Positions 1 through 55,699 of a stretch of DNA of 64,000 nucleotides are shown here, piece by piece; within the stretch, counting starts at the first letter, position 1; each line of letters starts with the position of its first letter. The translations under genes and the position numbers were made by a program. The notes under the pieces are model-generated. The model worked only from the letters and a program-made list of their open reading frames with translations. It was not told the DNA's origin and made no database searches. The stretch spans positions 1-64,000 of the IMG/VR virus record IMGVR_UViG_3300027816_000052; one strand, 5' to 3'.

Positions 1-1
1 A

Positions 2-622
2 AAGAGAAGTTTTACATTTTCTCCGGGAGCATTTGCATCTTTTATAACATCATCATCAGGTGAAAGATTTGTTAAACATCTTAATAACAAATATGATGAG
101 ATTGTTGTTAATGGGGGTTTGGATTTAGAAAAAACACAAATTCAATCCTTACCGGATAATCTTCATGTTGAAGGGAGTATGTATTTAAATAGATGCAAAA
201 ATCTTCAATCCTTACCGGATAATCTTTATGTTGGGGGAAGTTTGGATTTAGGTTATACACCAATTCAATCCTTACCGGATAATCTTTATTTTGAAAAAGA
301 TTTGGATTTAGGAGGAACACCAATTCAATCCTTACCTGATAATCTTTATGTTGAAGGGAGTATGTATTTAAATAGATGCAAAAATCTTCAATCCTTACCG
401 GATAATCTTTATGTTGGGGGATATTTGAATTTACATGAAACACAAATTCAATCCTTACCGGATAATCTTTATGTTGGGGGATATCTAAATTTAGATAAAA
501 CACCAATTCAATCCTTGCCGGATAATCTTGATGTTAAAGGGGTAATTTATATTCGTGGAACACCATTAAAAGATAATGATGAATTGGTTGCGAAATATAG
601 GAAAAAATATAGGATTTTATAG
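2..622 (+). CDS. LRR-like repeat protein, 5'-truncated by the window edge
   Basis: 20/21-aa repeats IQSLPDNLxVxGxLxLxxT. The frame is open back to position 2, and nt 1-118 closely match the 5' part of paralog 42879..43697. Confidence 0.85.
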   Translation, partial: KRSFTFSPGAFASFITSSSGERFVKHLNNKYDEIVVNGGLDLEKTQIQSLPDNLHVEGSMYLNRCKNLQSLPDNLYVGGSLDLGYTPIQSLPDNLYFEKDLDLGGTPIQSLPDNLYVEGSMYLNRCKNLQSLPDNLYVGGYLNLHETQIQSLPDNLYVGGYLNLDKTPIQSLPDNLDVKGVIYIRGTPLKDNDELVAKYRKKYRIL

Positions 623-634
623 AACTTTTTAATT

Positions 635-1114
635 ATGAAAAAGATTAAATTAACAGAATCCGACCTTTATAATATTATAGAGCGAGTTCTTCTTGAGCAA
701 GAGGAAAATAATAAACGTGTTTGGAATACAACTCCAGAACGTTTTATTATGGTTCTTAATAATGTTTTTAATGGAAATTCTGAAATGTTCAGAAAAATTC
801 TTAATAAAAAATATGATAACATTATTATTAATGAAGATTTGGATTTGAGTGAATCACGAATTAAAACCTTACCTGATAATCTTAAAGTTAAAGGTTATCT
901 TAATTTAAATTATACAAAAATAGAATCCTTACCGGATAATCTTCATGTTGAGGGGAATTTGTATTTAGCTTTTACACGAATTTATTCTTTACCGGATAAT
1001 CTTCGTGTTGGAGGTAAAATCTATATTCATGGAACACTATTAGTTAGAAATAGTGATTTAGTTGCGGAATATAGAAACAAACATAAAATTGAAGGATATT
1101 TTTGGTCATCATGA
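635..1114 (+). CDS. LRR-like repeat protein with MKKIKLTESDL leader
   Basis: Three LPDNLxVxGxLxL repeats; N-terminus shared with 26441..27148 and 42879..43697. Confidence 0.85.
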   Translation: MKKIKLTESDLYNIIERVLLEQEENNKRVWNTTPERFIMVLNNVFNGNSEMFRKILNKKYDNIIINEDLDLSESRIKTLPDNLKVKGYLNLNYTKIESLPDNLHVEGNLYLAFTRIYSLPDNLRVGGKIYIHGTLLVRNSDLVAEYRNKHKIEGYFWSS

Positions 1115-2265: not shown

Positions 2266-2339
2266 TGTGGGGTGGAGCAGATGGTTAGCTCGGAGGTCTC
2301 ATAAATCTCAGGTCGCTGGTTCAAGTCCAGCCCCCGCAA
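2266..2339 (+). tRNA. tRNA-Met(CAU), fMet-like body
   Basis: TGTGGGG/CCCCGCA acceptor; GAGGT-CTCATAA-ATCTC anticodon arm; GCTGG-TTCAAGT-CCAGC T-arm. Confidence 0.9.
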
Positions 2340-2340
2340 C

Positions 2341-2438
2341 AAAATGTTGATTAGTAGTTTAGTGGTTGAACTAAAAAGAAAATCTGACGCTCAGTAGCAA
2401 TAAATACCACCAGTCAGCTTCGTTCTAATTAACATTTT
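2341..2438 (+). ncRNA. Candidate structured RNA with kissing-loop pseudoknot
   Basis: 14-bp closing helix, two internal hairpins, loop GTGGT complementary to ACCAC. Confidence 0.55.
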
Positions 2439-2480
2439 ATTTTTATTGTTCTTTGACATATTTATCTTAAAAAAATTAAT

Positions 2481-2684
2481 ATGCAAAAAATATCTTTTAT
2501 TAAATTTAATTTTAAAAATGGATTAATTCATTTATTGACATTATTTTTTGGTAGTTTAATATTATTACCAATAACAGGTAATGAGATTTTTGAATTTAAA
2601 ATTTGGTTCATTATTTTATTGTTTCTTAGTATCTTTATGACGTACTTCAATTATCGTGTTTGGAAAAAATTAAAAATTAAATAA
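2481..2684 (+). CDS. Small two-TM membrane protein
   Basis: Two hydrophobic helices; preceded by the ATATTTAT motif. Confidence 0.6.
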   Translation: MQKISFIKFNFKNGLIHLLTLFFGSLILLPITGNEIFEFKIWFIILLFLSIFMTYFNYRVWKKLKIK

Positions 2685-3348
2685 TAATTCTTTGATTTAT
2701 TATGTTTGTGATAATATCAAGATATTTTTGAGAGGTAATCTCTTTAAAATATTTTTGTGCTGATGTATCAATAACACAAAAATCAATTTTTGCGTCATGA
2801 CATGCTTTTGACTTTGATTTATCATTTTCTTGAATTTGATTTAATTTTTTAATGCCATAAATTGGTTCATAGTGAAAAATTCCATTAAGTTCAAATGCAA
2901 TATTTAATGATGGAATATAAATATCTAATTCTGAGTTAATAGCTAATTTATCATTAAATTTGATATCTAGGTTTGGGTATAAAAATTCTAACTGCGATTG
3001 AATCCAAATTTCAAGTTTTGATTTTCTGTTGCCGTGTTTTTTATTTTTATTGTTATATGTTGCGGCACAAGATTTCGAACAAAAATGATTTATAGATCTA
3101 GAAATTTGATTATTTGCTTTGATAAATTTTTTATCACAATTAGTACATGTAACCTCTTTTCTTTTTTTTGCTGACAAACCATTACATTGTATTGAACAAA
3201 AACGTAATTGATTTTTTTGTTTTTCAATATTATATTTAATATGTCTTTTTTCAATATAGAAAAAATTATCACAATATTCACATATTAATCTTAACTTATC
3301 AAAATGTTTTGCATTATAATAATCAAATTCTGAATACGCTTTTTTCAT
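2677..3348 (-). CDS. Putative homing endonuclease (Zn-finger repeats plus Vsr/DUF559-like PD-(D/E)xK domain)
   Basis: CxxC...FCSxxC repeats, then ELDIYIPSLNIAFELNGIFHY and a C-terminal K..K..AC motif. Confidence 0.7.
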   Translation of the reverse strand: MKKAYSEFDYYNAKHFDKLRLICEYCDNFFYIEKRHIKYNIEKQKNQLRFCSIQCNGLSAKKRKEVTCTNCDKKFIKANNQISRSINHFCSKSCAATYNNKNKKHGNRKSKLEIWIQSQLEFLYPNLDIKFNDKLAINSELDIYIPSLNIAFELNGIFHYEPIYGIKKLNQIQENDKSKSKACHDAKIDFCVIDTSAQKYFKEITSQKYLDIITNIINQRIII

Positions 3349-3414
3349 TTATACATATATTTATATATAAATATATTAAATTTAATTTTCGAATCTGAAG
3401 TACTTTGAAATTAT

Positions 3415-3499
3415 GGAGGATCCCACTGGCGCGGTACGTAGTCTTGAAAACTATGAGGTCGGTAATACCGATGTGAAGGTTCGAGTCCATCATCCTCCG
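3415..3499 (+). tRNA. tRNA-Ser(UGA)
   Basis: GGAGGAT/ATCCTCC; GTAGT-CTTGAAA-ACTAT; long variable arm; G73. Confidence 0.9.
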
Positions 3500-3510
3500 C
3501 TAGATAAAAT

Positions 3511-3541
3511 TTGGAAGTTTGAAATTTTAGTTGTATCTTTG
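3511..3541 (+). promoter_or_regulatory. Bacteroidota-type promoter for the ncRNA/tRNA-Thr/Gly operon
   Basis: TTG-N20-TATCTTTG. Confidence 0.8.
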
Positions 3542-3543
3542 TA

Positions 3544-3668
3544 GAGCGTGTGAAGCATGTGAGCTAAGTTATCGAGGTGCTTGGTACGATTCGCGGTCGT
3601 GTTGCGCTGGAAACCATCAAAGGTTAAAAGACGTGAAACCAAGTTAAATGGTAAAATCTGACACATTC
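3544..3668 (+). ncRNA. Candidate structured RNA upstream of tRNA-Thr
   Basis: GCTTGGT/ACCAAGT, ACGAT/GTCGT, TGG-AAA-CCA; imperfect closing stem GAGCGTGT/ACACATTC. Confidence 0.4.
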
Positions 3669-3682
3669 AGCCTTAAATTTAC

Positions 3683-3758
3683 GCCACTGTAGCTCAATTG
3701 GCAGAGCACTAGTTTTGTAAACTAGCGGTTAGCGGTTCGACTCCGCTCAGTGGCTCCA
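3683..3758 (+). tRNA. tRNA-Thr(UGU), CCA encoded
   Basis: GCCACTG/CAGTGGC; CTAGT-TTTGTAA-ACTAG; ends TCCA. Confidence 0.95.
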
Positions 3759-3777
3759 AGAGTTCTTTGAAAAAGTT

Positions 3778-3907
3778 TGAGAAAAAGCGGAAGTACGAAA
3801 GTACGGGAAGATTGTGATAAAAAGAACAAGGAAATAGTCCCTCCCATTGCAGTCACAAGCATAATTGGGTAGAGTGGAAAGGTGAGTCCACGAACCGCTT
3901 TTTCTCA
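3778..3907 (+). ncRNA. Candidate structured RNA A
   Basis: Perfect 13-bp closing helix TGAGAAAAAGCGG/CCGCTTTTTCTCA; GTAC-GAAA-GTAC and GTGGA/TCCAC hairpins. Confidence 0.65.
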
Positions 3908-3918
3908 TTTTACATGAA

Positions 3919-4097
3919 AATATAAAATTAGTGAGCAAAGAGAAAGTGACTTCACCAGTCAGCGTAGTATACAACGGAAGCACGGGCAAGAAAGTAGCAT
4001 GGTAGCTACCTGAAATAAAAATCGATTGCTGGGACAAAACTGAAAACGTTTAATTGGATACCCTTAAAATGAAGATATACCTCACTAACTTTATATT
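3919..4097 (+). ncRNA. Candidate structured RNA B
   Basis: 16/17-bp closing helix; internal TGACT/AGTCA and GTAGC/GCTAC hairpins. Confidence 0.65.
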
Positions 4098-4102
4098 AAA
4101 AA

Positions 4103-4246
4103 TTTGTGGTCAGTACGGATTGACGTACCTAGTAAGCTGGTAAATTACATTACGAAGAAACGCTGAAGCGACTAAGAAATGTACTAATATGTAATTATTA
4201 GTGGGTTGTTGTTAAGTCTTAGTATGTTAGTTTTTAACACCACAAA
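4103..4246 (+). ncRNA. Candidate structured RNA C, pseudoknotted
   Basis: TTTGTGGT/ACCACAAA closing stem, AATTACAT/ATGTAATT, loop-loop ACTAAGA/TCTTAGT. Confidence 0.6.
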
Positions 4247-4250
4247 AAAA

Positions 4251-4324
4251 GCGAGTGTAGCTTAGTTGATTAAAGCGCCGTCCTTCCAAGTCGGAGATCG
4301 TCAGTTTGAGTCTGACCACTCGCT
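4251..4324 (+). tRNA. tRNA-Gly(UCC)
   Basis: GCGAGTG/CACTCGC; loop CTTCCAA; U73; T-loop TTTGAGT slightly atypical. Confidence 0.88.
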
Positions 4325-4410
4325 CACTAATCCCCTCTAACCTCTGAAGAAATTCAAGTTATTGGGTAAAACAGTTTCTTTTCATATTTATAGAATAAAC
4401 ATCTATCAAT

Positions 4411-7400
4411 ATGATTAAGAAAATATTTTTATCATTAGCAATACTTGCTTCAATTTTAAGCAATGCTGCAACATATTATGTTTCACCAAACGGAAATGAT
4501 TCAAATAATGGGACTTCAATAACCACTCCGTGGAAAACAATAAGTAAAGTTAACACCAGACAATTAGTAGCTGGGGACCAAATTTTATTTGAACGAAATG
4601 GAACATACAGAGGTAATTTAACAATTAACTATTCGGGTACCGATGTCAACCCAATTCTAATTTCCACTTATGGTAGTGGAAATAACCCCATATTACTTGG
4701 TTCACAATTAATTTCAAACTGGATATTACATCAAGGAAATATTTGGAAGACTCAAGTAAATGCAACACAAGTTGTTCATTTGTTCTTCAATGACAGTTTA
4801 ATGCCAATTGCAAGATATCCAAATAATGGTTGGTTAAGAAATATACAAGGAACAAATTCTCAAATAACAGATAATCAATTAACACAACCAGCGAATTATT
4901 GGAATGGTAGTACAATGGTTATTCGTAGTTCTTCTTGGAGTTATGATACAAGTAGAGTTTTATCATATAGTCCGGGGGTTATTAACTTTAGACCTATTAG
5001 TTATAACTTAGGAAACAGTACGTGGGGTTATTTTATCCGAAATAAATTTCAAGAATTAGATGCCCCCGGTGAATGGTTTTTTGATAAGACCATCAACACA
5101 TTATATTTTTACTCCCCAACAGGAAACCCAAATTTAAACGCGATTGAAATAATAACAGCCAATCAATCAACAAATGGTGTAGGAATAAGGGTTACTTGGC
5201 AAAGAAATAATATTATTATTGAAAATCTTACAATTAATAAGTATGGTTATGCTGGTGTTAGCACAAGCGGTACATCTAATATAACTGTAAGAAATTGTAA
5301 TATTAGTCAATGTGATCATGGTATGTGGTTATATGGTAATAATCAAATTATTAGAAATAATTTCATCACAAAATGTCCCCAAATGGGTTTAAATGCTGTT
5401 TCTGGTGGAAGCCCAATTAGTTATGGAAACAACAATACATTTGAAGATAATACCATCCAAAATTGTGCATTATATCCCGGTCTTGGAAAAAGCTCATGGG
5501 GTTATTTCGGAATGACCGTCACTGGTTCCAATAATATAATAAGAAAAAATAATATTACAAATATTGGTTATATTGCATTATCTTTCGAATCAAACCCATT
5601 AATTGAAAATAACTTTATAAGTAATGCATGTTCAATTTTAAATGATGGTTCTGGTATTGCATTTGATAGAACAAATGGTGCTGTTATTAGAAATAACATT
5701 GTTTTAAATACAATTGGTAATATTGAAAGTTGTGCAACAAATACAACCAACTGTGACCCAAAAGGTAAAGGAATATATTTTGGAAATGTTAGCAATAAAA
5801 ATAATTTAGTTGATGGTAATACTGTCGCATATTGTAACGGTGCTGGTATTTGGTTTGATCATACTATGCTATCAGAAGGTAATCAAATTATTAATAATAC
5901 CTTATTTGGGAACAATTTATATCAATTAGGTATTTCAGATTTTTCAAACTATAATAGTCCCGGAGCAATTGCTCCTTATGCAGTTCCGGTGTATAGTAAC
6001 CAACTTGTTAGAAATAATATTTTTTATTCAAATAACCAACAACAGAAAACCATGTACCACATAAATAAGTGGTATTCTGGTGTTGATTTTGCAAATTTTA
6101 ATGAAAATAAATATATTAACCCTTGGGATACTGTTAGTATTCAAGTTTTTGATATAGCAAATAATGGTAATTCTTTAAATTATTCATTAAATCAATGGAA
6201 AAATGTTAGAGGTGATGACTCTTTATCTACAAACCAACCTTATCTCCCTCAATCCGAATCATCTGATCATATTTTGGTTTATAATAATCAAATAACAGAA
6301 CAATCAATTAGTTTACCAAGTGGTACTTGGTCAGATTTAAACGGTAATTTATATAATTCTTCAATTAATATACCAGCATTTGAATCAAAACCTTTATTTA
6401 ATTCATTATTACTTCCTCCACCACCCTCAACCCCAAGCACTATTGTTTCTTTATTGGTTCAAGCTAGTGTTAATTCAACAACACCATCAATTACACTTTC
6501 ATGGATTAGTTATTCCACTGCAACAGGTTATTCTGTGTTCAGAAAATTAAAAAATGCAACATCTTGGGGAAGCGCAATAGCTACCTTAGGGGGTAGTGCA
6601 ACTCAGTATGTTGATAATAACGTTTCTTTAAATACATATTATGAATATCGTGTTGTTAGAAACGCTTCTGTTGGTACTGCATATGGTTATGTTGCAACAG
6701 GTATTAATCTCAATACAATTGATTATAGAGGTAAGCTAATATTAGTTGTTGATAATACATTTACAAGTAGTTTATCTTCACAACTAACTCAATTACAAAA
6801 TGATCTAAAATTAGATGGTTGGAATGTTATTAGAGTTGATGTTTCAAGAACAACAACACCAGCGTCAGTAAAATCTCAAATACAGACAATTTACAATACT
6901 GATCCAACTAATGTAAAATCAGTTTTATTATTTGGGCATGTTCCGGTTTATCGTTCTGGTAATATTGCACCAGATGGACATAGTTTAATTCCTTGGGCAT
7001 GTGATTCCTATTATGGTGATATGAATGGTTCTTGGACAACACCTCCCACAGCATTACCTTCAGATTTGGAGTTACAAGTGGGGAGGATTGATTTATTTAA
7101 TTTACCCGCGTTTGGACAAACAGAACAACAATTATTGTCAAATTATTTAACTAAATTACATCAATTTAAAACAAAACAATTTACTCCTCAAAACAGAATG
7201 TTAATTCAGGATAATTTAACTTGGGTTAATAATCCACTAGCTGAAACTTCTTATAGAACTGGTGGTCCTTTAGTTGGTGAAGCAAATATTACAACAATAC
7301 CAGCAAATAATCAACCAAATTTTGTATCAAGAATGTCTGATGGTTGGTTATGGGGTTATTTTTCTGGTGGTGGAACATACAATTCCGCTGCTGGGATTGG

Positions 7401-18046: not shown

Positions 18047-18421
18047 TGGTGGAGATGGAGGGTTTCGAAACCCTCGTCTTCCGCTGTCAACCTAAAGAGA
18101 CTACACGCTTAGAACAACATTAGTTCTTAATGTTTCGAAATATCAAGTTTCACTATATACCAACTTGCAAAGGTTTTCTTTGGTTAATTTTAAGTATCAA
18201 CCACACTTTTTTTGGAATTTCTGTTGCTAGGTAAATTCCCAAATTACCCCTTGTAGGTGTTAGCCTTAGGCTACAGCTACTTCTTCAGTCTTGATGAGAC
18301 CCAAAACTGACATCTTGTCTAAAACGTTGCCGTTTACTTGTTTGAACCATTTTAACAAGGTTGATTCACCCTTGACGTGCCTATTTAACCTAATCATCGG
18401 AATCAAATCCAACTCATCCCC
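18047..18421 (-). ncRNA. ssrA: tmRNA, tag (A)GNVLDKMSVLGLIKTEEVAVA
   Basis: 5' GGGGATGAGTTGGATTTGATTCCG; 3' CGGAAGACGAGGG-TTTCGAAA-CCCTCCATCTCCACCA; G3:U70; tag frame 18331..18269 ending TAA. Confidence 0.93.
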
Positions 18422-18442
18422 ATATATTTTCAAAGAACAATG

Positions 18443-18472
18443 CAAAGATAAGAACAAATTTTAAACTGACAA
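18443..18472 (-). promoter_or_regulatory. Bacteroidota-type promoter for tmRNA
   Basis: TTG-N19-TATCTTTG on the minus strand. Confidence 0.75.
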
Positions 18473-41334: not shown

Positions 41335-41339
41335 ATAAG

Positions 41340-41473
41340 CGGGGGAGGTTGGATTCGCACCAACAATCGTTACATTTCAGAGTAATTGCTTTACTGTTTC
41401 GAAGTATCTCATATTCTCACCACTCGGACGAGGGAAAATGAAATGAGTTTTTCTTTTTATTAGCTTCTCCCCC
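41340..41473 (-). ncRNA. tRNA-like RNA with large D-loop insertion and 8-nt anticodon loop
   Basis: GGGGGAG/CTCCCCC, GCT/AGC D-stem, TTAC/GTAA, GTTGG-TGCGAAT-CCAAC. Confidence 0.7.
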
Positions 41474-41485
41474 AAGAAATTATAG

Positions 41486-41568
41486 TGGATGTTGACGGAA
41501 TCGAACCGCGTTTCCAAACAGCACCCCCAACCTCATCATGAACGGTCGGTCAAGGTTTAGCAACACCC
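41486..41568 (-). ncRNA. tmRNA-TLD-like / Ala-acceptor tRNA-like RNA (83 nt)
   Basis: GGGTGTTG/CAACATCC with G3:U70, A73, T-loop TTCGATT, no D-stem. Confidence 0.7.
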
Positions 41569-41579
41569 AAAAAAGTTAG

Positions 41580-41653: not shown

Positions 41654-41658
41654 TTATG

Positions 41659-41792
41659 TGATGAGTGATGGATTCGAACCACCATAAGCTGCTTCGTTTA
41701 GGATATCCTCTAAGCAACAGCGGGATATGTATAGTGTTGGGTAACTATATCACTAATATCCACCGCAACCCGTTCCCTTGGGCTATCTCATC
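41659..41792 (-). ncRNA. tRNA-like RNA with extended anticodon and variable arms
   Basis: GATGAG/CTCATC, GCCC/GGGT D-stem, GGTGG-TTCGAAT-CCATC T-arm, no canonical anticodon loop. Confidence 0.7.
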
Positions 41793-41797
41793 AAATT

Positions 41798-41942
41798 GAG
41801 AGGACACCGATACCTCCTCTCTGGGTGGGTCTAATTTCGAATTCTTTTATGACTTGTTCTGAAAGTCGCCAACATACTCATCATTTCTGATTTAGTCATT
41901 GCACGTCCCACTTAACTTTAAACGCGGTCGGTTTTAAGGTAT
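41798..41942 (-). ncRNA. Candidate structured RNA downstream of tRNA-Pro
   Basis: GTGGG/CCCAC, GACTT/AAGTC, GAGAGGA/TCCTCTC, ATACCT/AGGTAT. Confidence 0.45.
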
Positions 41943-41950
41943 GTATTGTG

Positions 41951-52558: not shown

Positions 52559-55500
52559 ATGGAAGATGAAAAACTAACAATATGGCAACGACTTTCTAAA
52601 GGATTTGGTCCAAACTCATTACTTGGACAAGAAAGTCCAACATTTAAATTTGATAAGAAGGTTTTATTAAAAACACCGAATAAGCAAGAGTACGAAAGAG
52701 AAAAACTCCAAGCACAACAAACAGCTTATTTAACATACCAATGGAGTAAGATTGAAAATAATTTATATACACAATCAGTATATTATGAACCCACTAGATT
52801 AGCATCATATTATGATTATGAGAGTATGGAATATTTTCCGGAAATTTCAGCAGCATTAGATACATTTTCGGAAGAATCTACAACGCCAAATCAAGATGGT
52901 CAAATGTTACAGATTTATTCTGAATCAAAAAGAATTAAATCAATTTTAACAGATTTATTCTATAATCAATTAGATATTAACACAAATCTACCCATGTGGA
53001 CAAGAAATACTTGTAAGTATGGTGATAATTTTGTGTTTTTAAAACTAGACCCAGAAAAAGGTATTGTTGGTTGTTTTCAACTACCAAATATTGAAATTGA
53101 ACGTATTGAAAAGGGGATGGTTAAACGTCCGGGTGGGACACCAAATAGCGACCCAGAAAATAAACAAATGAAATTCTCTTGGAAACAAAAAGATTTAGAT
53201 TTTAATACTTGGGAGGTCGCACATTTTAGATTATTGGGTGATGATAGAAAATTACCATACGGTACTTCGATGTTAGAAAAAGCGAGAAGAATTTGGAAAC
53301 AATTAGTTCTTGCTGAAGATGCAATGTTAATTTATAGAACATCTAGAGCACCGGAAAGAAGAGTATTTAAAGTTTTTGTTGGTAATATGGATGATAAAGA
53401 TGTTGAAGCATATGTGCAAAGATTTGCAAATAAATTTAAGCGAGACCAAGTAGCGGACCCAAAAACGGGTAATGTGGATTTACGTTTTAATCAAATGGCG
53501 GTAGACCAAGATTATTTTGTACCGGTTAGGGATATTGCTGCACCTAATCCGATTGATACATTACCGGGAGCGTGTATTGATTTAAATACCAGAATTCCCC
53601 TTCTTGATGGTAGAACTTTAACTTTACAACAAATAATTAATGAGTGGGATAATGGTAATAGAAACTTATGGGTTTATTCTTGTGACCCAAATACAGGGTC
53701 CGTACATCCGGGTATGGTAACTTGGGCTGGTGTAACAAGAAAAGACGCTGAAGTTATTAAAATTACATTAGACAATGGTGAAGAGGTGATTACAACTCCA
53801 GACCATAAATTTGTTCATAGAACTAGAGAATTTGTTGAAGCGAAAGATTTAATTGTTGGGGATAGTTTAATGCCTTTTTATTCAAGAACCGAAAAAATAA
53901 AGACCAACACTAATGATTATCACCAAATTTTTGATAATGAAAAAAATCAATGGGTTTTTACGCATAGAATGGTAAAAAACAGTACTGTTGGTAGTTCTTT
54001 AGTAAAAGAATGGGTTTTTAATTCTGAATTTAAAAATAAAGATAAAAAAATAATTCACCATAAAGACCATAATCGCTTTAATAATAATCCAAATAATTTA
54101 CTAATAATGAATGGTGAAGACCATTTAAAATATCACCAACATATCATAAAAGAAACGATTTGGAAAGATATTGAACTTAATAAGAAAAAAATTTCAGAAG
54201 GTATTAAAAATTATTTAAATAATCTTTCTTCAGATGAATTACAAAAAAGACATGAAAGAATTAATAATCCAATATCAAAAGCTAAAACAACTAAAAAGTT
54301 ATTGGAATGGAATAAAAATGATGAAAATTTAAAAAATAAAGGTAAAAAAATTTCAAAAGCTTATACAGAAGAAAGAAAAAATAAGATAAAGGAATTAAAT
54401 TTAATAAGGTGGTTGAATGATGATTATCGAAATAAAGTTTTTTCTAAAAAACAAACAATAACATTTGATGATTATATATATAATTCATTTGTTAGTGAAT
54501 TTAAAAAGACTTTACGTGCTGATTTAGCGTTAAAGAACTTAAATAATTCTTTTGAATTTATTTCACATTTTAAACAAATTAATGAGGAAATTAGAAGTTC
54601 GTTAACAAACTTAAATGAATTCACGCAAAACCATGTAGATAAAATGGTTAAACAACAAGGGTTTAAAAATTTTACTGAATGGAAACATTTTGAGTGTAAA
54701 AAGAGAGGATTTAAAAATATTCGTCAATGGAAATATAATGTTGAGAAAGAAATTTATTTTAACCATAAAATAACAAAAATTGAATGGTTAACAAATAAAA
54801 TTGACACTGGTACGATTACGGTTGATGGTAATGAATTATATTCAAAATCTCACACTTTTGCTATTGAAAGTGGTATTTTTATTAAAAATTCTAACCTTTC
54901 TGAAATTGCAGATATAGAATACATCCAGAAAAAACTTTTAACAGCATTAAGGATACCAAAAGCGTTCCTTGGGTTTGAAGAAGTTGTTGCTGATGGTAAA
55001 AATCTTGCGTTACAAGATATTCGTTTTGCTAGAACAATTAACAGAATACAAAAAAGTATGTTAGCGGAATTAAATAAAATTGCTATTATACATTTATTTA
55101 TTTTAGGTTTTGAAGATGAACTTTCTAACTTTACATTAGGATTAACAAACCCATCAACACAAGCTGATTTATTAAAGGTTGAGGTTTGGAAAGAGAAAAT
55201 CTTACTTTATAAAGACGCTGTTGCAGGAATTGAGGGTATTGCACCAACTTCACATTCTTGGGCTAAAAAACATATTCTTGGTTTCTCGGATGATGAAATT
55301 AAACTTGATATTCAACAACAAAGAATTGAAAAGGCGGTCGCAAAAGAACTTGAGAACACACCAAATGTGATTGTAAAAACAGGTATTTTTGATAGTGTTG
55401 ATGCAATCTACGGTCAAAAAGGTGGTGGTACTCAAGCTGGAACTCCCCCTCAAGAACCAACATCTGATATGACAATGCCTGAAACTAGTCCAGCATCATC

Positions 55501-55699
55501 ACCATCAATAACTCCACCAGAAGCTCCTGAGAGCGCACCAACTGAAACTCCAACAACAGTACCTGAATCAAAACAGGAAAGAGTAAATATTTTACTTGAA
55601 GGTGGTCTTTTAAATGAAGATGAAGAAATCGATTTGAGTAAAGCTAGAATTCAATTAGGTGAAATGGAAGAACATTTAAATAAACTTCTAAAGTCGTGA
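52559..55699 (+). CDS. gp20: Portal protein (T4 gp20-like) containing an intein
   Basis: YPEISAALD, MLIYRTSRAPERRVF, DYFVP, IDTLPGA|...|SNLSEIADIEYIQKKL. Confidence 0.92.
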   Translation: MEDEKLTIWQRLSKGFGPNSLLGQESPTFKFDKKVLLKTPNKQEYEREKLQAQQTAYLTYQWSKIENNLYTQSVYYEPTRLASYYDYESMEYFPEISAALDTFSEESTTPNQDGQMLQIYSESKRIKSILTDLFYNQLDINTNLPMWTRNTCKYGDNFVFLKLDPEKGIVGCFQLPNIEIERIEKGMVKRPGGTPNSDPENKQMKFSWKQKDLDFNTWEVAHFRLLGDDRKLPYGTSMLEKARRIWKQLVLAEDAMLIYRTSRAPERRVFKVFVGNMDDKDVEAYVQRFANKFKRDQVADPKTGNVDLRFNQMAVDQDYFVPVRDIAAPNPIDTLPGACIDLNTRIPLLDGRTLTLQQIINEWDNGNRNLWVYSCDPNTGSVHPGMVTWAGVTRKDAEVIKITLDNGEEVITTPDHKFVHRTREFVEAKDLIVGDSLMPFYSRTEKIKTNTNDYHQIFDNEKNQWVFTHRMVKNSTVGSSLVKEWVFNSEFKNKDKKIIHHKDHNRFNNNPNNLLIMNGEDHLKYHQHIIKETIWKDIELNKKKISEGIKNYLNNLSSDELQKRHERINNPISKAKTTKKLLEWNKNDENLKNKGKKISKAYTEERKNKIKELNLIRWLNDDYRNKVFSKKQTITFDDYIYNSFVSEFKKTLRADLALKNLNNSFEFISHFKQINEEIRSSLTNLNEFTQNHVDKMVKQQGFKNFTEWKHFECKKRGFKNIRQWKYNVEKEIYFNHKITKIEWLTNKIDTGTITVDGNELYSKSHTFAIESGIFIKNSNLSEIADIEYIQKKLLTALRIPKAFLGFEEVVADGKNLALQDIRFARTINRIQKSMLAELNKIAIIHLFILGFEDELSNFTLGLTNPSTQADLLKVEVWKEKILLYKDAVAGIEGIAPTSHSWAKKHILGFSDDEIKLDIQQQRIEKAVAKELENTPNVIVKTGIFDSVDAIYGQKGGGTQAGTPPQEPTSDMTMPETSPASSPSITPPEAPESAPTETPTTVPESKQERVNILLEGGLLNEDEEIDLSKARIQLGEMEEHLNKLLKS
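53573..54889 (+). mobile_element. Intein (439 aa) with HNH homing endonuclease
   Basis: CIDLNTRIPLLDG, TTPDHKF block B, WVFTHR...IHHKDHNRFNNNPNNL, HTFAIESGIFIKN|S. Confidence 0.9.

What the first reader, a model, noticed from the sequence alone, without database searches (positions are those of the whole stretch)
4103..4246. Structured RNA C with a 7-bp loop-loop pseudoknot
Seen: closing TTTGTGGT/ACCACAAA; hairpins GTAC/GTAC, CTAG/CTGG, CGC-TGAA-GCG; AATTACAT/ATGTAATT encloses ACTAAGA, which is complementary to TCTTAGT in the loop of GTTAA/TTAAC. It ends 4 nt before tRNA-Gly, so RNase P cleavage would define its 3' end (inference).
Basis: seen in the sequence. Interest (0 to 1): 0.62.

Follow-up and report, generated by a model that had tools for sequence, protein, structure and literature searches.

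The report
Orphan hairpin domain in tRNA-Gly leader
The stretch is the last, lineage-specific hairpin domain of a long, abundantly expressed RNA that a freshwater jumbo phage makes just upstream of its tRNA-Gly; the proposed pseudoknot is not supported, and no relative carries the element.

Summary
Self-complementarity is modestly above chance: 4 perfect stems of 7 bp or more against 0.86 expected (P=0.014), z about -2, and top 1.6% of GC-matched windows of this genome.

The 7-bp "loop-loop pseudoknot" depends on one helix choice. AATTACAT/ATGTAATT has ensemble probability about 0. The competing hairpin ACTAATA/TATTAGT has probability about 1. ACTAAGA/TCTTAGT then forms as an ordinary nested helix.

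The window is a 256-kb Bacteroidota-type jumbo phage. One metatranscriptome holds a 479-nt contig covering exactly 3772-4250 at about 139x, against 3-11x for neighbours. It starts 3 nt after a conserved GTTCTTTG box and ends at the RNase P site. C is therefore the 3' domain of a long tRNA-Gly leader made of B, B2 and C.

B is conserved, with 2 compensatory pairs. B2 and C are absent from every relative found. There, tRNA-Gly follows B after 11-13 nt, or unrelated RNAs fill the slot. BLAST, exact-pattern scans, a covariance model and Rfam found no C homologue, so covariation cannot be tested. Function is unknown, and C is probably a stabilising or passenger module.

The parts
3683..3758 (+). 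tRNA-Thr(UGU), upstream neighbour of the transcription unit
   Evidence: ARAGORN; Rfam tRNA 70.8 bits
3761..3771 (+). Conserved motif AGTTCTTTGAA, containing GTTCTTTG at 3762-3769. Likely a Bacteroidota-type -7 promoter box for the leader/tRNA-Gly unit, or alternatively a processing site.
   Evidence: The motif is conserved just after tRNA-Thr in L131, L133, L135 and L223, although the downstream RNA differs. The same 9-mer lies 8 nt before the tmRNA 5' end and before ORF 2481. It is exactly the gap between RNA contigs 3411-3760 and 3772-4250 in X11. The promoter assignment is an inference from the known TAnnTTTG/-33 TTTG consensus.
3772..4250 (+). Abundant ~479-nt RNA made of B, B2 and C: the 5' leader of the tRNA-Gly precursor
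   Evidence: Metatranscriptome X11 holds a 479-nt contig covering exactly 3772-4250 at depth 138.9. Neighbouring contigs are at 2.6-10.9. The strand is inferred from the tRNA orientation and the motif, because contigs do not give strand.
3778..3907 (+). Domain B: 13-bp closing helix, GUAC-GAAA-GUAC hairpin and three further hairpins. Conserved in relatives.
   Evidence: Fold. z=-4.7. 98.7% identity to L131 and 83-84% to L134, L225 and L226. Two compensatory pairs, C-G to U-A and U-A to C-G.
3919..4097 (+). Domain B2: closing helix of 8+8 bp, ATATAAAATTAGTGAG/CTCACTAACTTTATAT. Lineage-specific.
   Evidence: Folds. Absent from L131, L134 and L225-L227.
4103..4246 (+). Domain C, the finding: an 8-bp closing helix around a multi-hairpin interior. 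Lineage-specific.
   Evidence: Only identical copies exist elsewhere: L002/L121, plus sequencing runs holding 100% of its words.
4103..4110 (+). 5' strand of the closing helix of C (pairs with 4239-4246)
   Evidence: Pair probabilities 0.82-1.0 for seven of the eight pairs and 0.40 for the outermost 4103/4246 pair
4239..4246 (+). 3' strand of the closing helix of C
4113..4128 (+). Hairpin GTACG-GATTGA-CGTAC
   Evidence: Present in the MFE; p about 0.45
4129..4140 (+). Hairpin CTAG-TAAG-CTGG (one G-U pair)
   Evidence: Present in the MFE; p about 0.25-0.3
4161..4170 (+). Hairpin CGC-TGAA-GCG
   Evidence: Present in the MFE; p about 0.4
4171..4177 (+). ACTAAGA, which pairs with TCTTAGT at 4217-4223.
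   Evidence: p=0.35 as a nested helix
4182..4203 (+). Dominant hairpin (U)ACUAAUA-UGUAAU-UAUUAGU(G).
   Evidence: p=0.97-1.0; the competing helix has p=0.00
4217..4223 (+). TCTTAGT, partner of ACTAAGA
4251..4325 (+). tRNA-Gly(UCC). RNase P cleavage at 4250/4251 would release the leader.
   Evidence: ARAGORN; Rfam 64.2 bits; the RNA contig ends at 4250

Best explanation
C is not a free-standing pseudoknotted RNA. It is the 3'-terminal domain of a roughly 479-nt 5' leader of the tRNA-Gly precursor in a freshwater jumbo phage that probably infects Flavobacteriales or other Bacteroidota.

Proposed mechanism. Transcription starts about 3 nt after a conserved GTTCTTTG box that sits right behind tRNA-Thr, at about 3772 (inferred). 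The transcript runs through three self-contained domains, B, B2 and C, each closed by its own terminal helix, and then into tRNA-Gly. RNase P cuts at 4250/4251 and releases the leader; the position fits the contig end but the enzyme is inferred. The leader accumulates far above neighbouring transcripts (shown in one metatranscriptome).

C folds as a nested multi-hairpin: an 8-bp closing helix, a very stable ACUAAUA/UAUUAGU hairpin, and possibly the ACUAAGA/UCUUAGU helix around it. B2 and C together are a roughly 340-nt lineage-specific insertion between the conserved domain B and tRNA-Gly.

The most likely role of C is structural. It puts the newly made 3' end (ACCACAAAAAAA-3') next to a closed helix, which would slow 3'-to-5' exonucleases and help the leader persist. 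It may equally be a passenger with no selected function of its own. Any trans-acting function is undemonstrated.
For: Non-coding status and context. The stretch 3759-4250 is free of plus-strand ORFs, inside a tRNA array of a 256-kb virus record. The 96-aa minus-strand ORF has no relatives.

Expression and ends. Metatranscriptome X11 has a contig covering exactly 3772-4250 at depth 138.9, against 2.6-10.9 for flanking contigs. A second RNA run, X9, also covers the region. Six RNA runs hold the stretch.

Promoter box. GTTCTTTG(A) lies at 3762, 3 nt before the contig start. It recurs 8 nt before the tmRNA and is conserved behind tRNA-Thr in relatives whose downstream RNA differs.

Domain architecture. 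The 492-nt fold gives three domains with terminal helices. The closing helix of C has p=0.82-1.0 for seven of its eight pairs and the inner hairpin p about 1.0.

Insertion. L131, L134, L225, L226 and L227 have B followed after 11-13 nt by tRNA-Gly.

Modest structural excess in C: P=0.014, z about -2, top 1.6% of GC-matched windows.
Against: Contigs cannot formally give RNA ends, strand or level, as the tool itself warns. The clean 3772-4250 contig is seen in only one run. In X9 a 6.2-kb contig runs from 3796 through tRNA-Gly into the downstream gene. The raw reads were not available.

The promoter assignment rests on a motif, and the -33 TTTG element is not evident. No evidence shows whether B, B2 and C stay joined or are cut apart.

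The 'stabiliser' role is an inference with no test here. C's GC content (0.33) is ordinary for this genome, at the 75th percentile. That fits a passenger as well as a selected structure.
Confidence: 0.6

Rival explanations
1. C is an autonomous structured RNA, possibly catalytic. Its core is a 7-bp kissing or loop-loop pseudoknot between ACUAAGA, inside the AAUUACAU/AUGUAAUU stem, and UCUUAGU, in the loop of GUUAA/UUAAC.
For: All the stated complementary segments exist. Four perfect stems of 7 bp or more are more than shuffles give (P=0.014). The 3' end at the RNase P site fits.
Against: The scaffold helices have ensemble probability 0.00. The scaffold is -21.2 kcal/mol, plus at most -5.9 for the extra helix and before any pseudoknot penalty, against -34.9 for the nested MFE. 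A 7-bp complement in a 144-nt AT-rich sequence is expected about once by chance (mean 0.86 stems of 7 bp or more). No Rfam ribozyme or other family matches at E<=10. No homologue exists to show covariation. The RNA contig shows no break at 4102/4103.
Confidence: 0.07
2. C, together with B2, is a functionless recent insertion. It would be a recombination scar or the remnant of a small mobile, inverted-repeat-bounded DNA element that landed in a tRNA-array hot spot. It is transcribed only because it sits inside the leader of tRNA-Gly, and its hairpins reflect palindromic DNA, not selection on RNA.
For: C is absent from all relatives, including those whose B domain is 98.7% identical. Its GC content is ordinary. 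Both strands fold equally well, as expected of DNA palindromes. The array is demonstrably a site of gene gain and loss: ORF 2677-3348 is missing in a strain in run X13, and the Thr-Gly slot holds unrelated sequences in other relatives.
Against: There is no second copy of C or B2 in the 256-kb genome or in any related record, so there is no sign of a repeated mobile element. No target-site duplication is visible at the borders. The RNA carrying it is the most abundant species of the locus. Folding is in the top 1.6% of GC-matched windows.
Confidence: 0.27
3. C is a module of a trans-acting phage RNA. It could be a decoy or sponge for a host RNA-binding protein or nuclease, or a subunit of a self-assembling large RNA in the manner of ROOL and GOLLD. 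The Thr-Gly slot would then be a fast-evolving cassette under an arms race.
For: The RNA is highly abundant. The slot has a conserved promoter box and tRNA-Gly but swappable RNA content across relatives: B alone; B+B2+C; a 477-nt 53%-GC RNA; a 309-nt RNA. ROOL and GOLLD are phage RNAs often found near tRNA islands (PMC12286853).
Against: There is no partner, no target complementarity and no homologues. Rfam ROOL, GOLLD, Y-RNA and other models do not match. The genome has no Ro60/TROVE or RtcB. Nothing here is specific to C as opposed to B.
Confidence: 0.06

Closest known systems
[quoted passage not shown]
   Same: They are non-coding RNAs encoded among phage tRNA genes and co-expressed with them. 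They accumulate during infection, and their function is unknown (PMC3014915, PMC9697503).
   Different: There is no sequence relation: a phage-database BLAST of 3400-4400 hit only tRNAs. The RNA here is about 479 nt and made of three domains, whereas the T4 RNAs are described only as small RNAs. The phage group and host phylum differ. C itself is confined to one lineage.
ROOL and GOLLD large ornate RNAs (Rfam families)
   Same: They are large structured RNAs of phages and prophages, often next to tRNA islands and sometimes covalently linked to tRNAs. Their function is unknown (PMC12286853).
   Different: Rfam 15, which I take to include both families, gave no hit at E<=10. The RNA here is shorter. 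Only domain B shows conservation and covariation. C has no homologues and no supported pseudoknot. Multimerisation was not tested.
Ordinary pre-tRNA 5' leaders released by RNase P
   Same: C lies directly upstream of a tRNA 5' end, and the RNA contig ends at the -1 position.
   Different: Bacterial leaders are usually short and quickly degraded (general knowledge). This one is about 479 nt, highly structured, and about 13-50 times more abundant in contig depth than neighbouring transcripts.
Bacterial Y RNAs (YrlA), with a closing stem plus a tRNA-like module
   Same: A long helix is formed by the 5' and 3' ends around a multi-hairpin interior. Y-RNA-like genes occur in phages near tRNAs, and a related phage contig (L228) encodes a TROVE/Ro60 protein.
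   Different: Rfam YrlA does not match C. C has no T-arm or D-arm signature. The window's genome has no TROVE or RtcB gene.

Membership tests
Any Rfam 15 family (ribozymes, riboswitches, sRNAs, ROOL, GOLLD, YrlA, group I/II introns, 6S, RNase P) | Covariance-model score at or near the family's gathering threshold | tested here: not met
   cmscan of 2300-4450 with permissive filters at E<=10 returned only the tRNAs and spurious antisense-tRNA hits. Nothing overlapped 3759-4250. The gathering-threshold scan of the whole window gave the same result.
ROOL / GOLLD | Location in a phage or prophage next to a tRNA island | tested here: met
   The element lies between tRNA-Thr and tRNA-Gly of a 256-kb phage with 22 tRNA genes called by ARAGORN plus a tmRNA found by Rfam.
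ROOL / GOLLD | Conserved, covarying ornate secondary structure shared across many genomes | tested here: not met
   C has no homologue in IMG/VR, JGI metagenome loci, Logan/ENA contigs of relatives, INPHARED phages or GTDB genomes.
ROOL / GOLLD | Homo-oligomeric RNA-only assembly | not testable with these tools
   This needs native gels or cryo-EM.
tRNA / tRNA-like element | Cloverleaf with D and T arms detected by ARAGORN or the Rfam tRNA model | tested here: not met
   Neither ARAGORN nor the Rfam tRNA clan calls anything in 4103-4246. There is no GTTCGAAT-type T loop.
Y RNA (YrlA) / Ro60 system | Match to the YrlA model, with a Ro60 (TROVE) gene in the genome | tested here: not met
   No YrlA hit on C. 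PF05731 and PF01139 are absent from G000, while the positive controls were found. The record is estimated 85% complete.
   Pair probability is 0.00 for AATTACAT/ATGTAATT and for GTTAA/TTAAC. The competing hairpin has p about 1.0. The scaffold is -21.2 against an MFE of -34.9 kcal/mol. This is a nearest-neighbour model only, with no probing data.
   No diverged homologue exists in any collection searched. The only other copies are 100% identical.
tRNA-cluster stable RNA of phages (T4 RNAC/RNAD kind; a functional class, not a homology family) | Non-coding, encoded within a phage tRNA cluster, and accumulates as RNA | tested here: met
   No ORF on the tRNA strand. The element sits inside the tRNA array. 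The RNA contig 3772-4250 is at about 139x against 3-11x for neighbours.
MITE-like / mobile inverted-repeat element | Multiple copies, with terminal inverted repeats and a target-site duplication | tested here: not met
   There is an 8-bp terminal inverted repeat. However, the element is single-copy in the 256-kb genome and in 20 related records, and no duplication is visible at the borders.

The most novel reading that the evidence does not exclude
The site between a conserved GTTCTTTG promoter box and tRNA-Gly may be a hypervariable 'RNA cassette' slot in this clade of freshwater jumbo phages. Related phages load it with different highly expressed structured RNAs: B alone; B+B2+C; or an unrelated 477-nt 53%-GC RNA. 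RNase P releases each of them. In this reading C is a recently acquired functional module, for example a decoy against a host RNA-targeting defence or a part of a self-assembling RNA, and not filler.
Probability: 0.12. Interest if true: 0.7.

Novelty: new member of a known kind. Interest (0 to 1): 0.33.

Why it matters
As posed, the finding does not hold up. A pseudoknotted and possibly catalytic RNA is not supported, and the element is an orphan.

The context matters more. An uncultured freshwater jumbo phage appears to make a 479-nt structured RNA at much higher levels than its neighbouring genes. The RNA seems to be delimited by a promoter box and by RNase P cleavage at a tRNA. Related phages keep the box and the tRNA but swap the RNA in between.

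This adds a Bacteroidota-phage example to the unexplained association of large or stable non-coding RNAs with phage tRNA islands, alongside T4 RNAC/RNAD, ROOL and GOLLD. It also offers natural comparisons for testing what such RNAs do: B alone, B+B2+C, and the unrelated 477-nt RNA. For C specifically the pay-off is small unless a deletion shows a phenotype.

Tried and rejected
- Rfam at the gathering threshold and at E<=10 gave nothing on 3759-4250. Rfam on relatives' slots also gave nothing.
- BLASTN (word size 7) of C, B2, B and A found no paralogue or homologue of C. It was run against the whole 256-kb genome and all fetched loci.
- A search of INPHARED phages with 3400-4400 in distant mode hit tRNAs only.
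- Four exact-pattern scans of IMG/VR were run. Three used segments of C: GTACGGATTGACGTAC, CGCTGAAGCGACTAAGA and GTTAAGTCTTAGTATGT. One used the tRNA-Gly D-loop. They returned only the same phage contig (L121) plus chance hits in unrelated, often GC-rich phages.
- One scan of GTDB genome contigs found 0 hits.
- Anchoring on RNA A in IMG/VR found only L003 and the own contig.
- A single-sequence covariance model of C (R1) was searched against G000, 20 related virus records and more than 100 loci, with filters off for the closest relatives. It found nothing below E=0.1 except C itself.
- Minus-strand 96-aa ORF 3750-4037 as a protein: no relatives, so a coding explanation was dropped.
- Y RNA/Ro60 idea: no TROVE or RtcB in the genome.
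- tRNA-like reading of C (8-bp 'acceptor', 2 nt, hairpins): no T arm and no detector support.
- Idea that B2's closing helix derives from tRNA-Gly ends (shared CTCACTAA): only an 8-mer is shared, so it was not pursued.
- D (the L223 477-nt RNA) is not present in G000.
- Limits: no pseudoknot-aware folding program was available. The read laying and the look-up of sequencing runs caps (one call each) stopped a second look at the raw ends, at the circular-looking contig and at the positions of the 2 variant bases in run X13.

Full report
**What the window is.** The window is the first 64 kb of a 256,029-bp IMG/VR virus record, G000, estimated 85% complete and about 30% GC. ARAGORN tRNA genes and Rfam finds a tmRNA. 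The record also encodes a large terminase, a portal protein and a major head protein. It is therefore a jumbo phage. The gene downstream of the finding encodes a 1451-aa beta-helix protein. Its non-phage relatives come from Flavobacteriales and other Bacteroidota assemblies. Intergenic regions carry TTTG...TAnnTTTG-type motifs at 2129-2170 and 3504-3542. I read these, from general knowledge, as Bacteroidota-type promoters. Sequencing runs that hold the locus are freshwater metagenomes, 'fungus metagenome' runs and unspecified metagenomes.

**Checking the observation.** The element ends at 4246, 4 nt before tRNA-Gly(UCC) at 4251. No plus-strand ORF of 30 aa or more lies in 3873-4410.

Three controls give a modest excess of structure:
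- There are 4 perfect stems of 7 bp or more, against 0.86 expected in dinucleotide shuffles (P=0.014).
- The MFE of -34.9 kcal/mol gives z=-1.9 to -2.15.
- The MFE is in the lowest 1.6% of GC-matched 144-nt windows of the same genome.

The borders were picked at the closing stem, which flatters these numbers. The minus strand folds as well (z=-2.41). GC content is ordinary, at 0.33 and the 75th percentile. For comparison, domain B is 0.41 and the tRNAs are 0.52-0.53.

**The pseudoknot.** The two 7-mers ACTAAGA and TCTTAGT are complementary. Whether they form a loop-loop pseudoknot depends on which other helices form.

The competing hairpin has 0.97-1.0. ACTAAGA/TCTTAGT appears as an ordinary nested helix with p=0.35. 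The extra 7-bp duplex is worth at most -5.9 before any pseudoknot penalty. The pseudoknot-free MFE is -34.9. No pseudoknot-aware program was available, so this is an energy argument and not a proof. It does remove the need for a pseudoknot.

**What surrounds it.** The ORF-free stretch 3759-4250 folds into three consecutive domains, each closed by its own terminal helix:
- B (3778-3907) has a 13-bp closing helix.
- B2 (3919-4097) has an 8+8-bp closing helix.
- C (4103-4246) has an 8-bp closing helix.

No Rfam 15 family matches any of them, even at E<=10.

**Expression.** Twenty public runs hold the locus or part of it. Six of them are metatranscriptomic. Only Logan contigs could be laid, not raw reads, so ends, strand and level are indirect. 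The pattern is nevertheless informative.

In RNA run X11 a 479-nt contig covers exactly 3772-4250 at depth 138.9. The flanking contigs have these depths:
- 10.9 for 3411-3760;
- 5.3 for 4356-4829;
- 2.6-8.7 for the other flanking contigs.

DNA contamination would give uniform depth. The contig's 3' end, at 4250, is the base before tRNA-Gly +1. Its 5' end, at 3772, lies 3 nt after GTTCTTTG (3762-3769).

That 9-mer, GTTCTTTGA, occurs only four times in the genome. Three of the four sit just upstream of a gene or RNA start: here, 8 nt before the tmRNA, and before ORF 2481. The longer motif AGTTCTTTGAA is conserved behind tRNA-Thr in relatives whose downstream RNA is different. I infer a promoter -7 box with a start at about 3772. 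A processing site is the alternative.

In RNA run X9 a 6.2-kb contig runs from 3796 through tRNA-Gly into the beta-helix gene. Read-through precursors, or DNA, therefore also exist. Nothing marks a boundary at 4102/4103. C therefore shows up as the 3' domain of a roughly 479-nt RNA and not as a separate molecule.

**Relatives.** Loci were recovered from three sources: IMG/VR, JGI metagenomes, and Logan/ENA contigs reached through the beta-helix protein. The contents of the Thr-Gly slot are as follows.

| Locus | Beta-helix protein identity to window | Content between tRNA-Thr and tRNA-Gly |
|---|---|---|
| L131 | 84% aa | B (98.7% identical), then 13 nt, then a somewhat degenerate tRNA-Gly |
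| L134, L225, L226, L227 | 82-87% aa | B (83-84% identical), then 11 nt, then tRNA-Gly |
| L223/L224 | same 90%-identity protein cluster | unrelated 477-nt RNA, 53% GC, MFE -168 kcal/mol |
| L133 | 64% aa | 309-nt RNA sharing only its first 61 nt with the L223 RNA |
| L135 | 60% aa | a tRNA-like element, a small ORF and a closed hairpin |
| L003 | 67% aa | no tRNA-Gly and no spacer RNA |

B is a genuine conserved structure, with two compensatory pairs among five sequences. B2 and C together are a roughly 340-nt insertion found only in this phage and in 100%-identical copies (L002/L121 and the runs holding all its words).

**Search for C homologues.** All searches were negative:
- BLASTN with word size 7 against the genome and all loci.
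- The phage database.
- Three exact-pattern scans of IMG/VR and one of GTDB contigs.
- A covariance model of C against G000, 20 related virus records and more than 100 loci.

The homologous loci lack the whole element.

**Interpretation.** The best-supported picture has C as the lineage-specific 3' domain of a long, stable 5' leader of tRNA-Gly. The leader would be transcribed from a conserved box behind tRNA-Thr and released by RNase P. C's robust features are the closing helix and the UACUAAUA hairpin. The rest of its interior is thermodynamically soft, with p=0.25-0.45.

C places the RNase P-generated 3' end, ACCACAAAAAAA, against a closed helix. The simplest role is therefore protection of the leader from 3' exonucleases. 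This is inference. A neutral passenger insertion is nearly as likely, and I give it 0.27. The autonomous pseudoknotted RNA gets 0.07. A trans-acting decoy or assembly module gets 0.06.

[quoted passage not shown] It also resembles ROOL and GOLLD, which are large phage RNAs often found near tRNA islands (PMC12286853). It is not a member of any of these families. The Rfam models do not match, there is no sequence similarity to known phages, and no conserved ornate structure can be shown for C. A Y-RNA reading fails too. There is no YrlA match and no Ro60 or RtcB gene in the genome, although one relative, L228, encodes a TROVE protein.

**Verdict.** The pseudoknot and 'autonomous RNA' readings are not supported. 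The RNase P 3'-end inference is supported indirectly. C is an orphan domain of an expressed tRNA-Gly leader. Interest for C alone is low to moderate. The variable, highly expressed RNA slot it sits in is the more promising lead.

Noticed in passing
window 3411-3760: Both RNA runs laid (X9 and X11) contain a circular-looking 350-nt contig. Its end at 3760 (2 nt after the encoded CCA of tRNA-Thr) joins back to 3411 (4 nt before tRNA-Ser). It therefore covers tRNA-Ser, RNA A and tRNA-Thr head-to-tail. It could be a circular or ligated RNA, a library ligation artefact that marks true ends, or a tandem duplication in a strain.
   Followed up: no
window 3545-3682 (RNA A, behind the promoter-like TTTG...TATCTTTG at 3516-3541): The non-coding stretch between tRNA-Ser and tRNA-Thr is conserved: 95.6% in L131 and 89-90% in L134, L225 and L226. 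Its 3' part (TAAATGGTAAAATC..ACACATTCA) is also conserved in the more distant L003, L133 and L223. It has no Rfam hit, and its MFE is no better than shuffles (z=+0.27).
   Followed up: partly
window 3778-3907 (domain B): B is a conserved structured RNA with a GUAC-GAAA-GUAC hairpin and a 13-bp closing helix. Two compensatory pairs appear across five sequences, and z=-4.7. In relatives it is the only element between tRNA-Thr and tRNA-Gly.
   Followed up: partly
L223:4315-4791 and L224 (same slot); L133:4510-4818: In the phage whose beta-helix protein falls in the same 90%-identity cluster as the window's, the Thr-Gly slot holds an unrelated 477-nt RNA. It has 53% GC in a phage group of roughly 30% GC (the window genome's value) and an MFE of -168 kcal/mol. 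L133 has a 309-nt version sharing the first 61 nt. There is no Rfam match, and the RNA is absent from G000.
   Followed up: partly
window 2341-2464: The stretch downstream of tRNA-Met is 82-87% conserved in L134, L225, L226 and L227. It shares short motifs with A (AAAATCTGAC) and with B2 (CACCAGTCAGC). It may be another small RNA or a leader.
   Followed up: no
window 2677-3348 (minus strand): This 223-aa ORF has a zf-FCS-type zinc finger and sits inside the tRNA array. A strain in run X13 lacks it (joint 2675 to 3415, with 5 other letters between). The spacing of tRNA genes in the closest relatives leaves little room for it, although this was not checked directly. It looks like a mobile (homing-endonuclease-like?) insertion.
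   Followed up: no
window 41335-41578 and 41654-41949 (minus strand): Spacers of the second tRNA array contain tRNA-like genes with acceptor and T arms but long internal insertions of about 60-100 nt. ARAGORN and Rfam do not call them. They could be intron-containing or otherwise non-canonical tRNAs.
   Followed up: no
window 18047-18421 (minus strand) and 18422-18455: The phage encodes a tmRNA (100 bits). It is preceded by TATCTTTG and then GTTCTTTGA, 8 nt before its 5' end. This is the same box that precedes the B-B2-C RNA.
   Followed up: partly
L228:10632-12068: A related phage contig (66% aa in the beta-helix protein) encodes a TROVE/Ro60-family protein. The window's genome has none.
   Followed up: partly
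window 52559-55699: The portal protein ORF (1046 aa) carries an HNH-endonuclease-like segment at about residues 448-535, in the middle of the ORF. This suggests an inserted homing element or a fusion.
   Followed up: no
L131:4841-4914 and L131:93-247: The tRNA-Gly of L131 is degenerate: 40 bits against 64-69 in relatives, and ARAGORN does not call it. A sub-threshold group I intron hit (35.5 bits, E=1e-5) lies at L131:93-247 on the minus strand.
   Followed up: no
window 1-1114: Two adjacent ORFs are built of about 60-nt repeats encoding 'IQSLPDNL'-type leucine-rich-repeat-like units.
   Followed up: no
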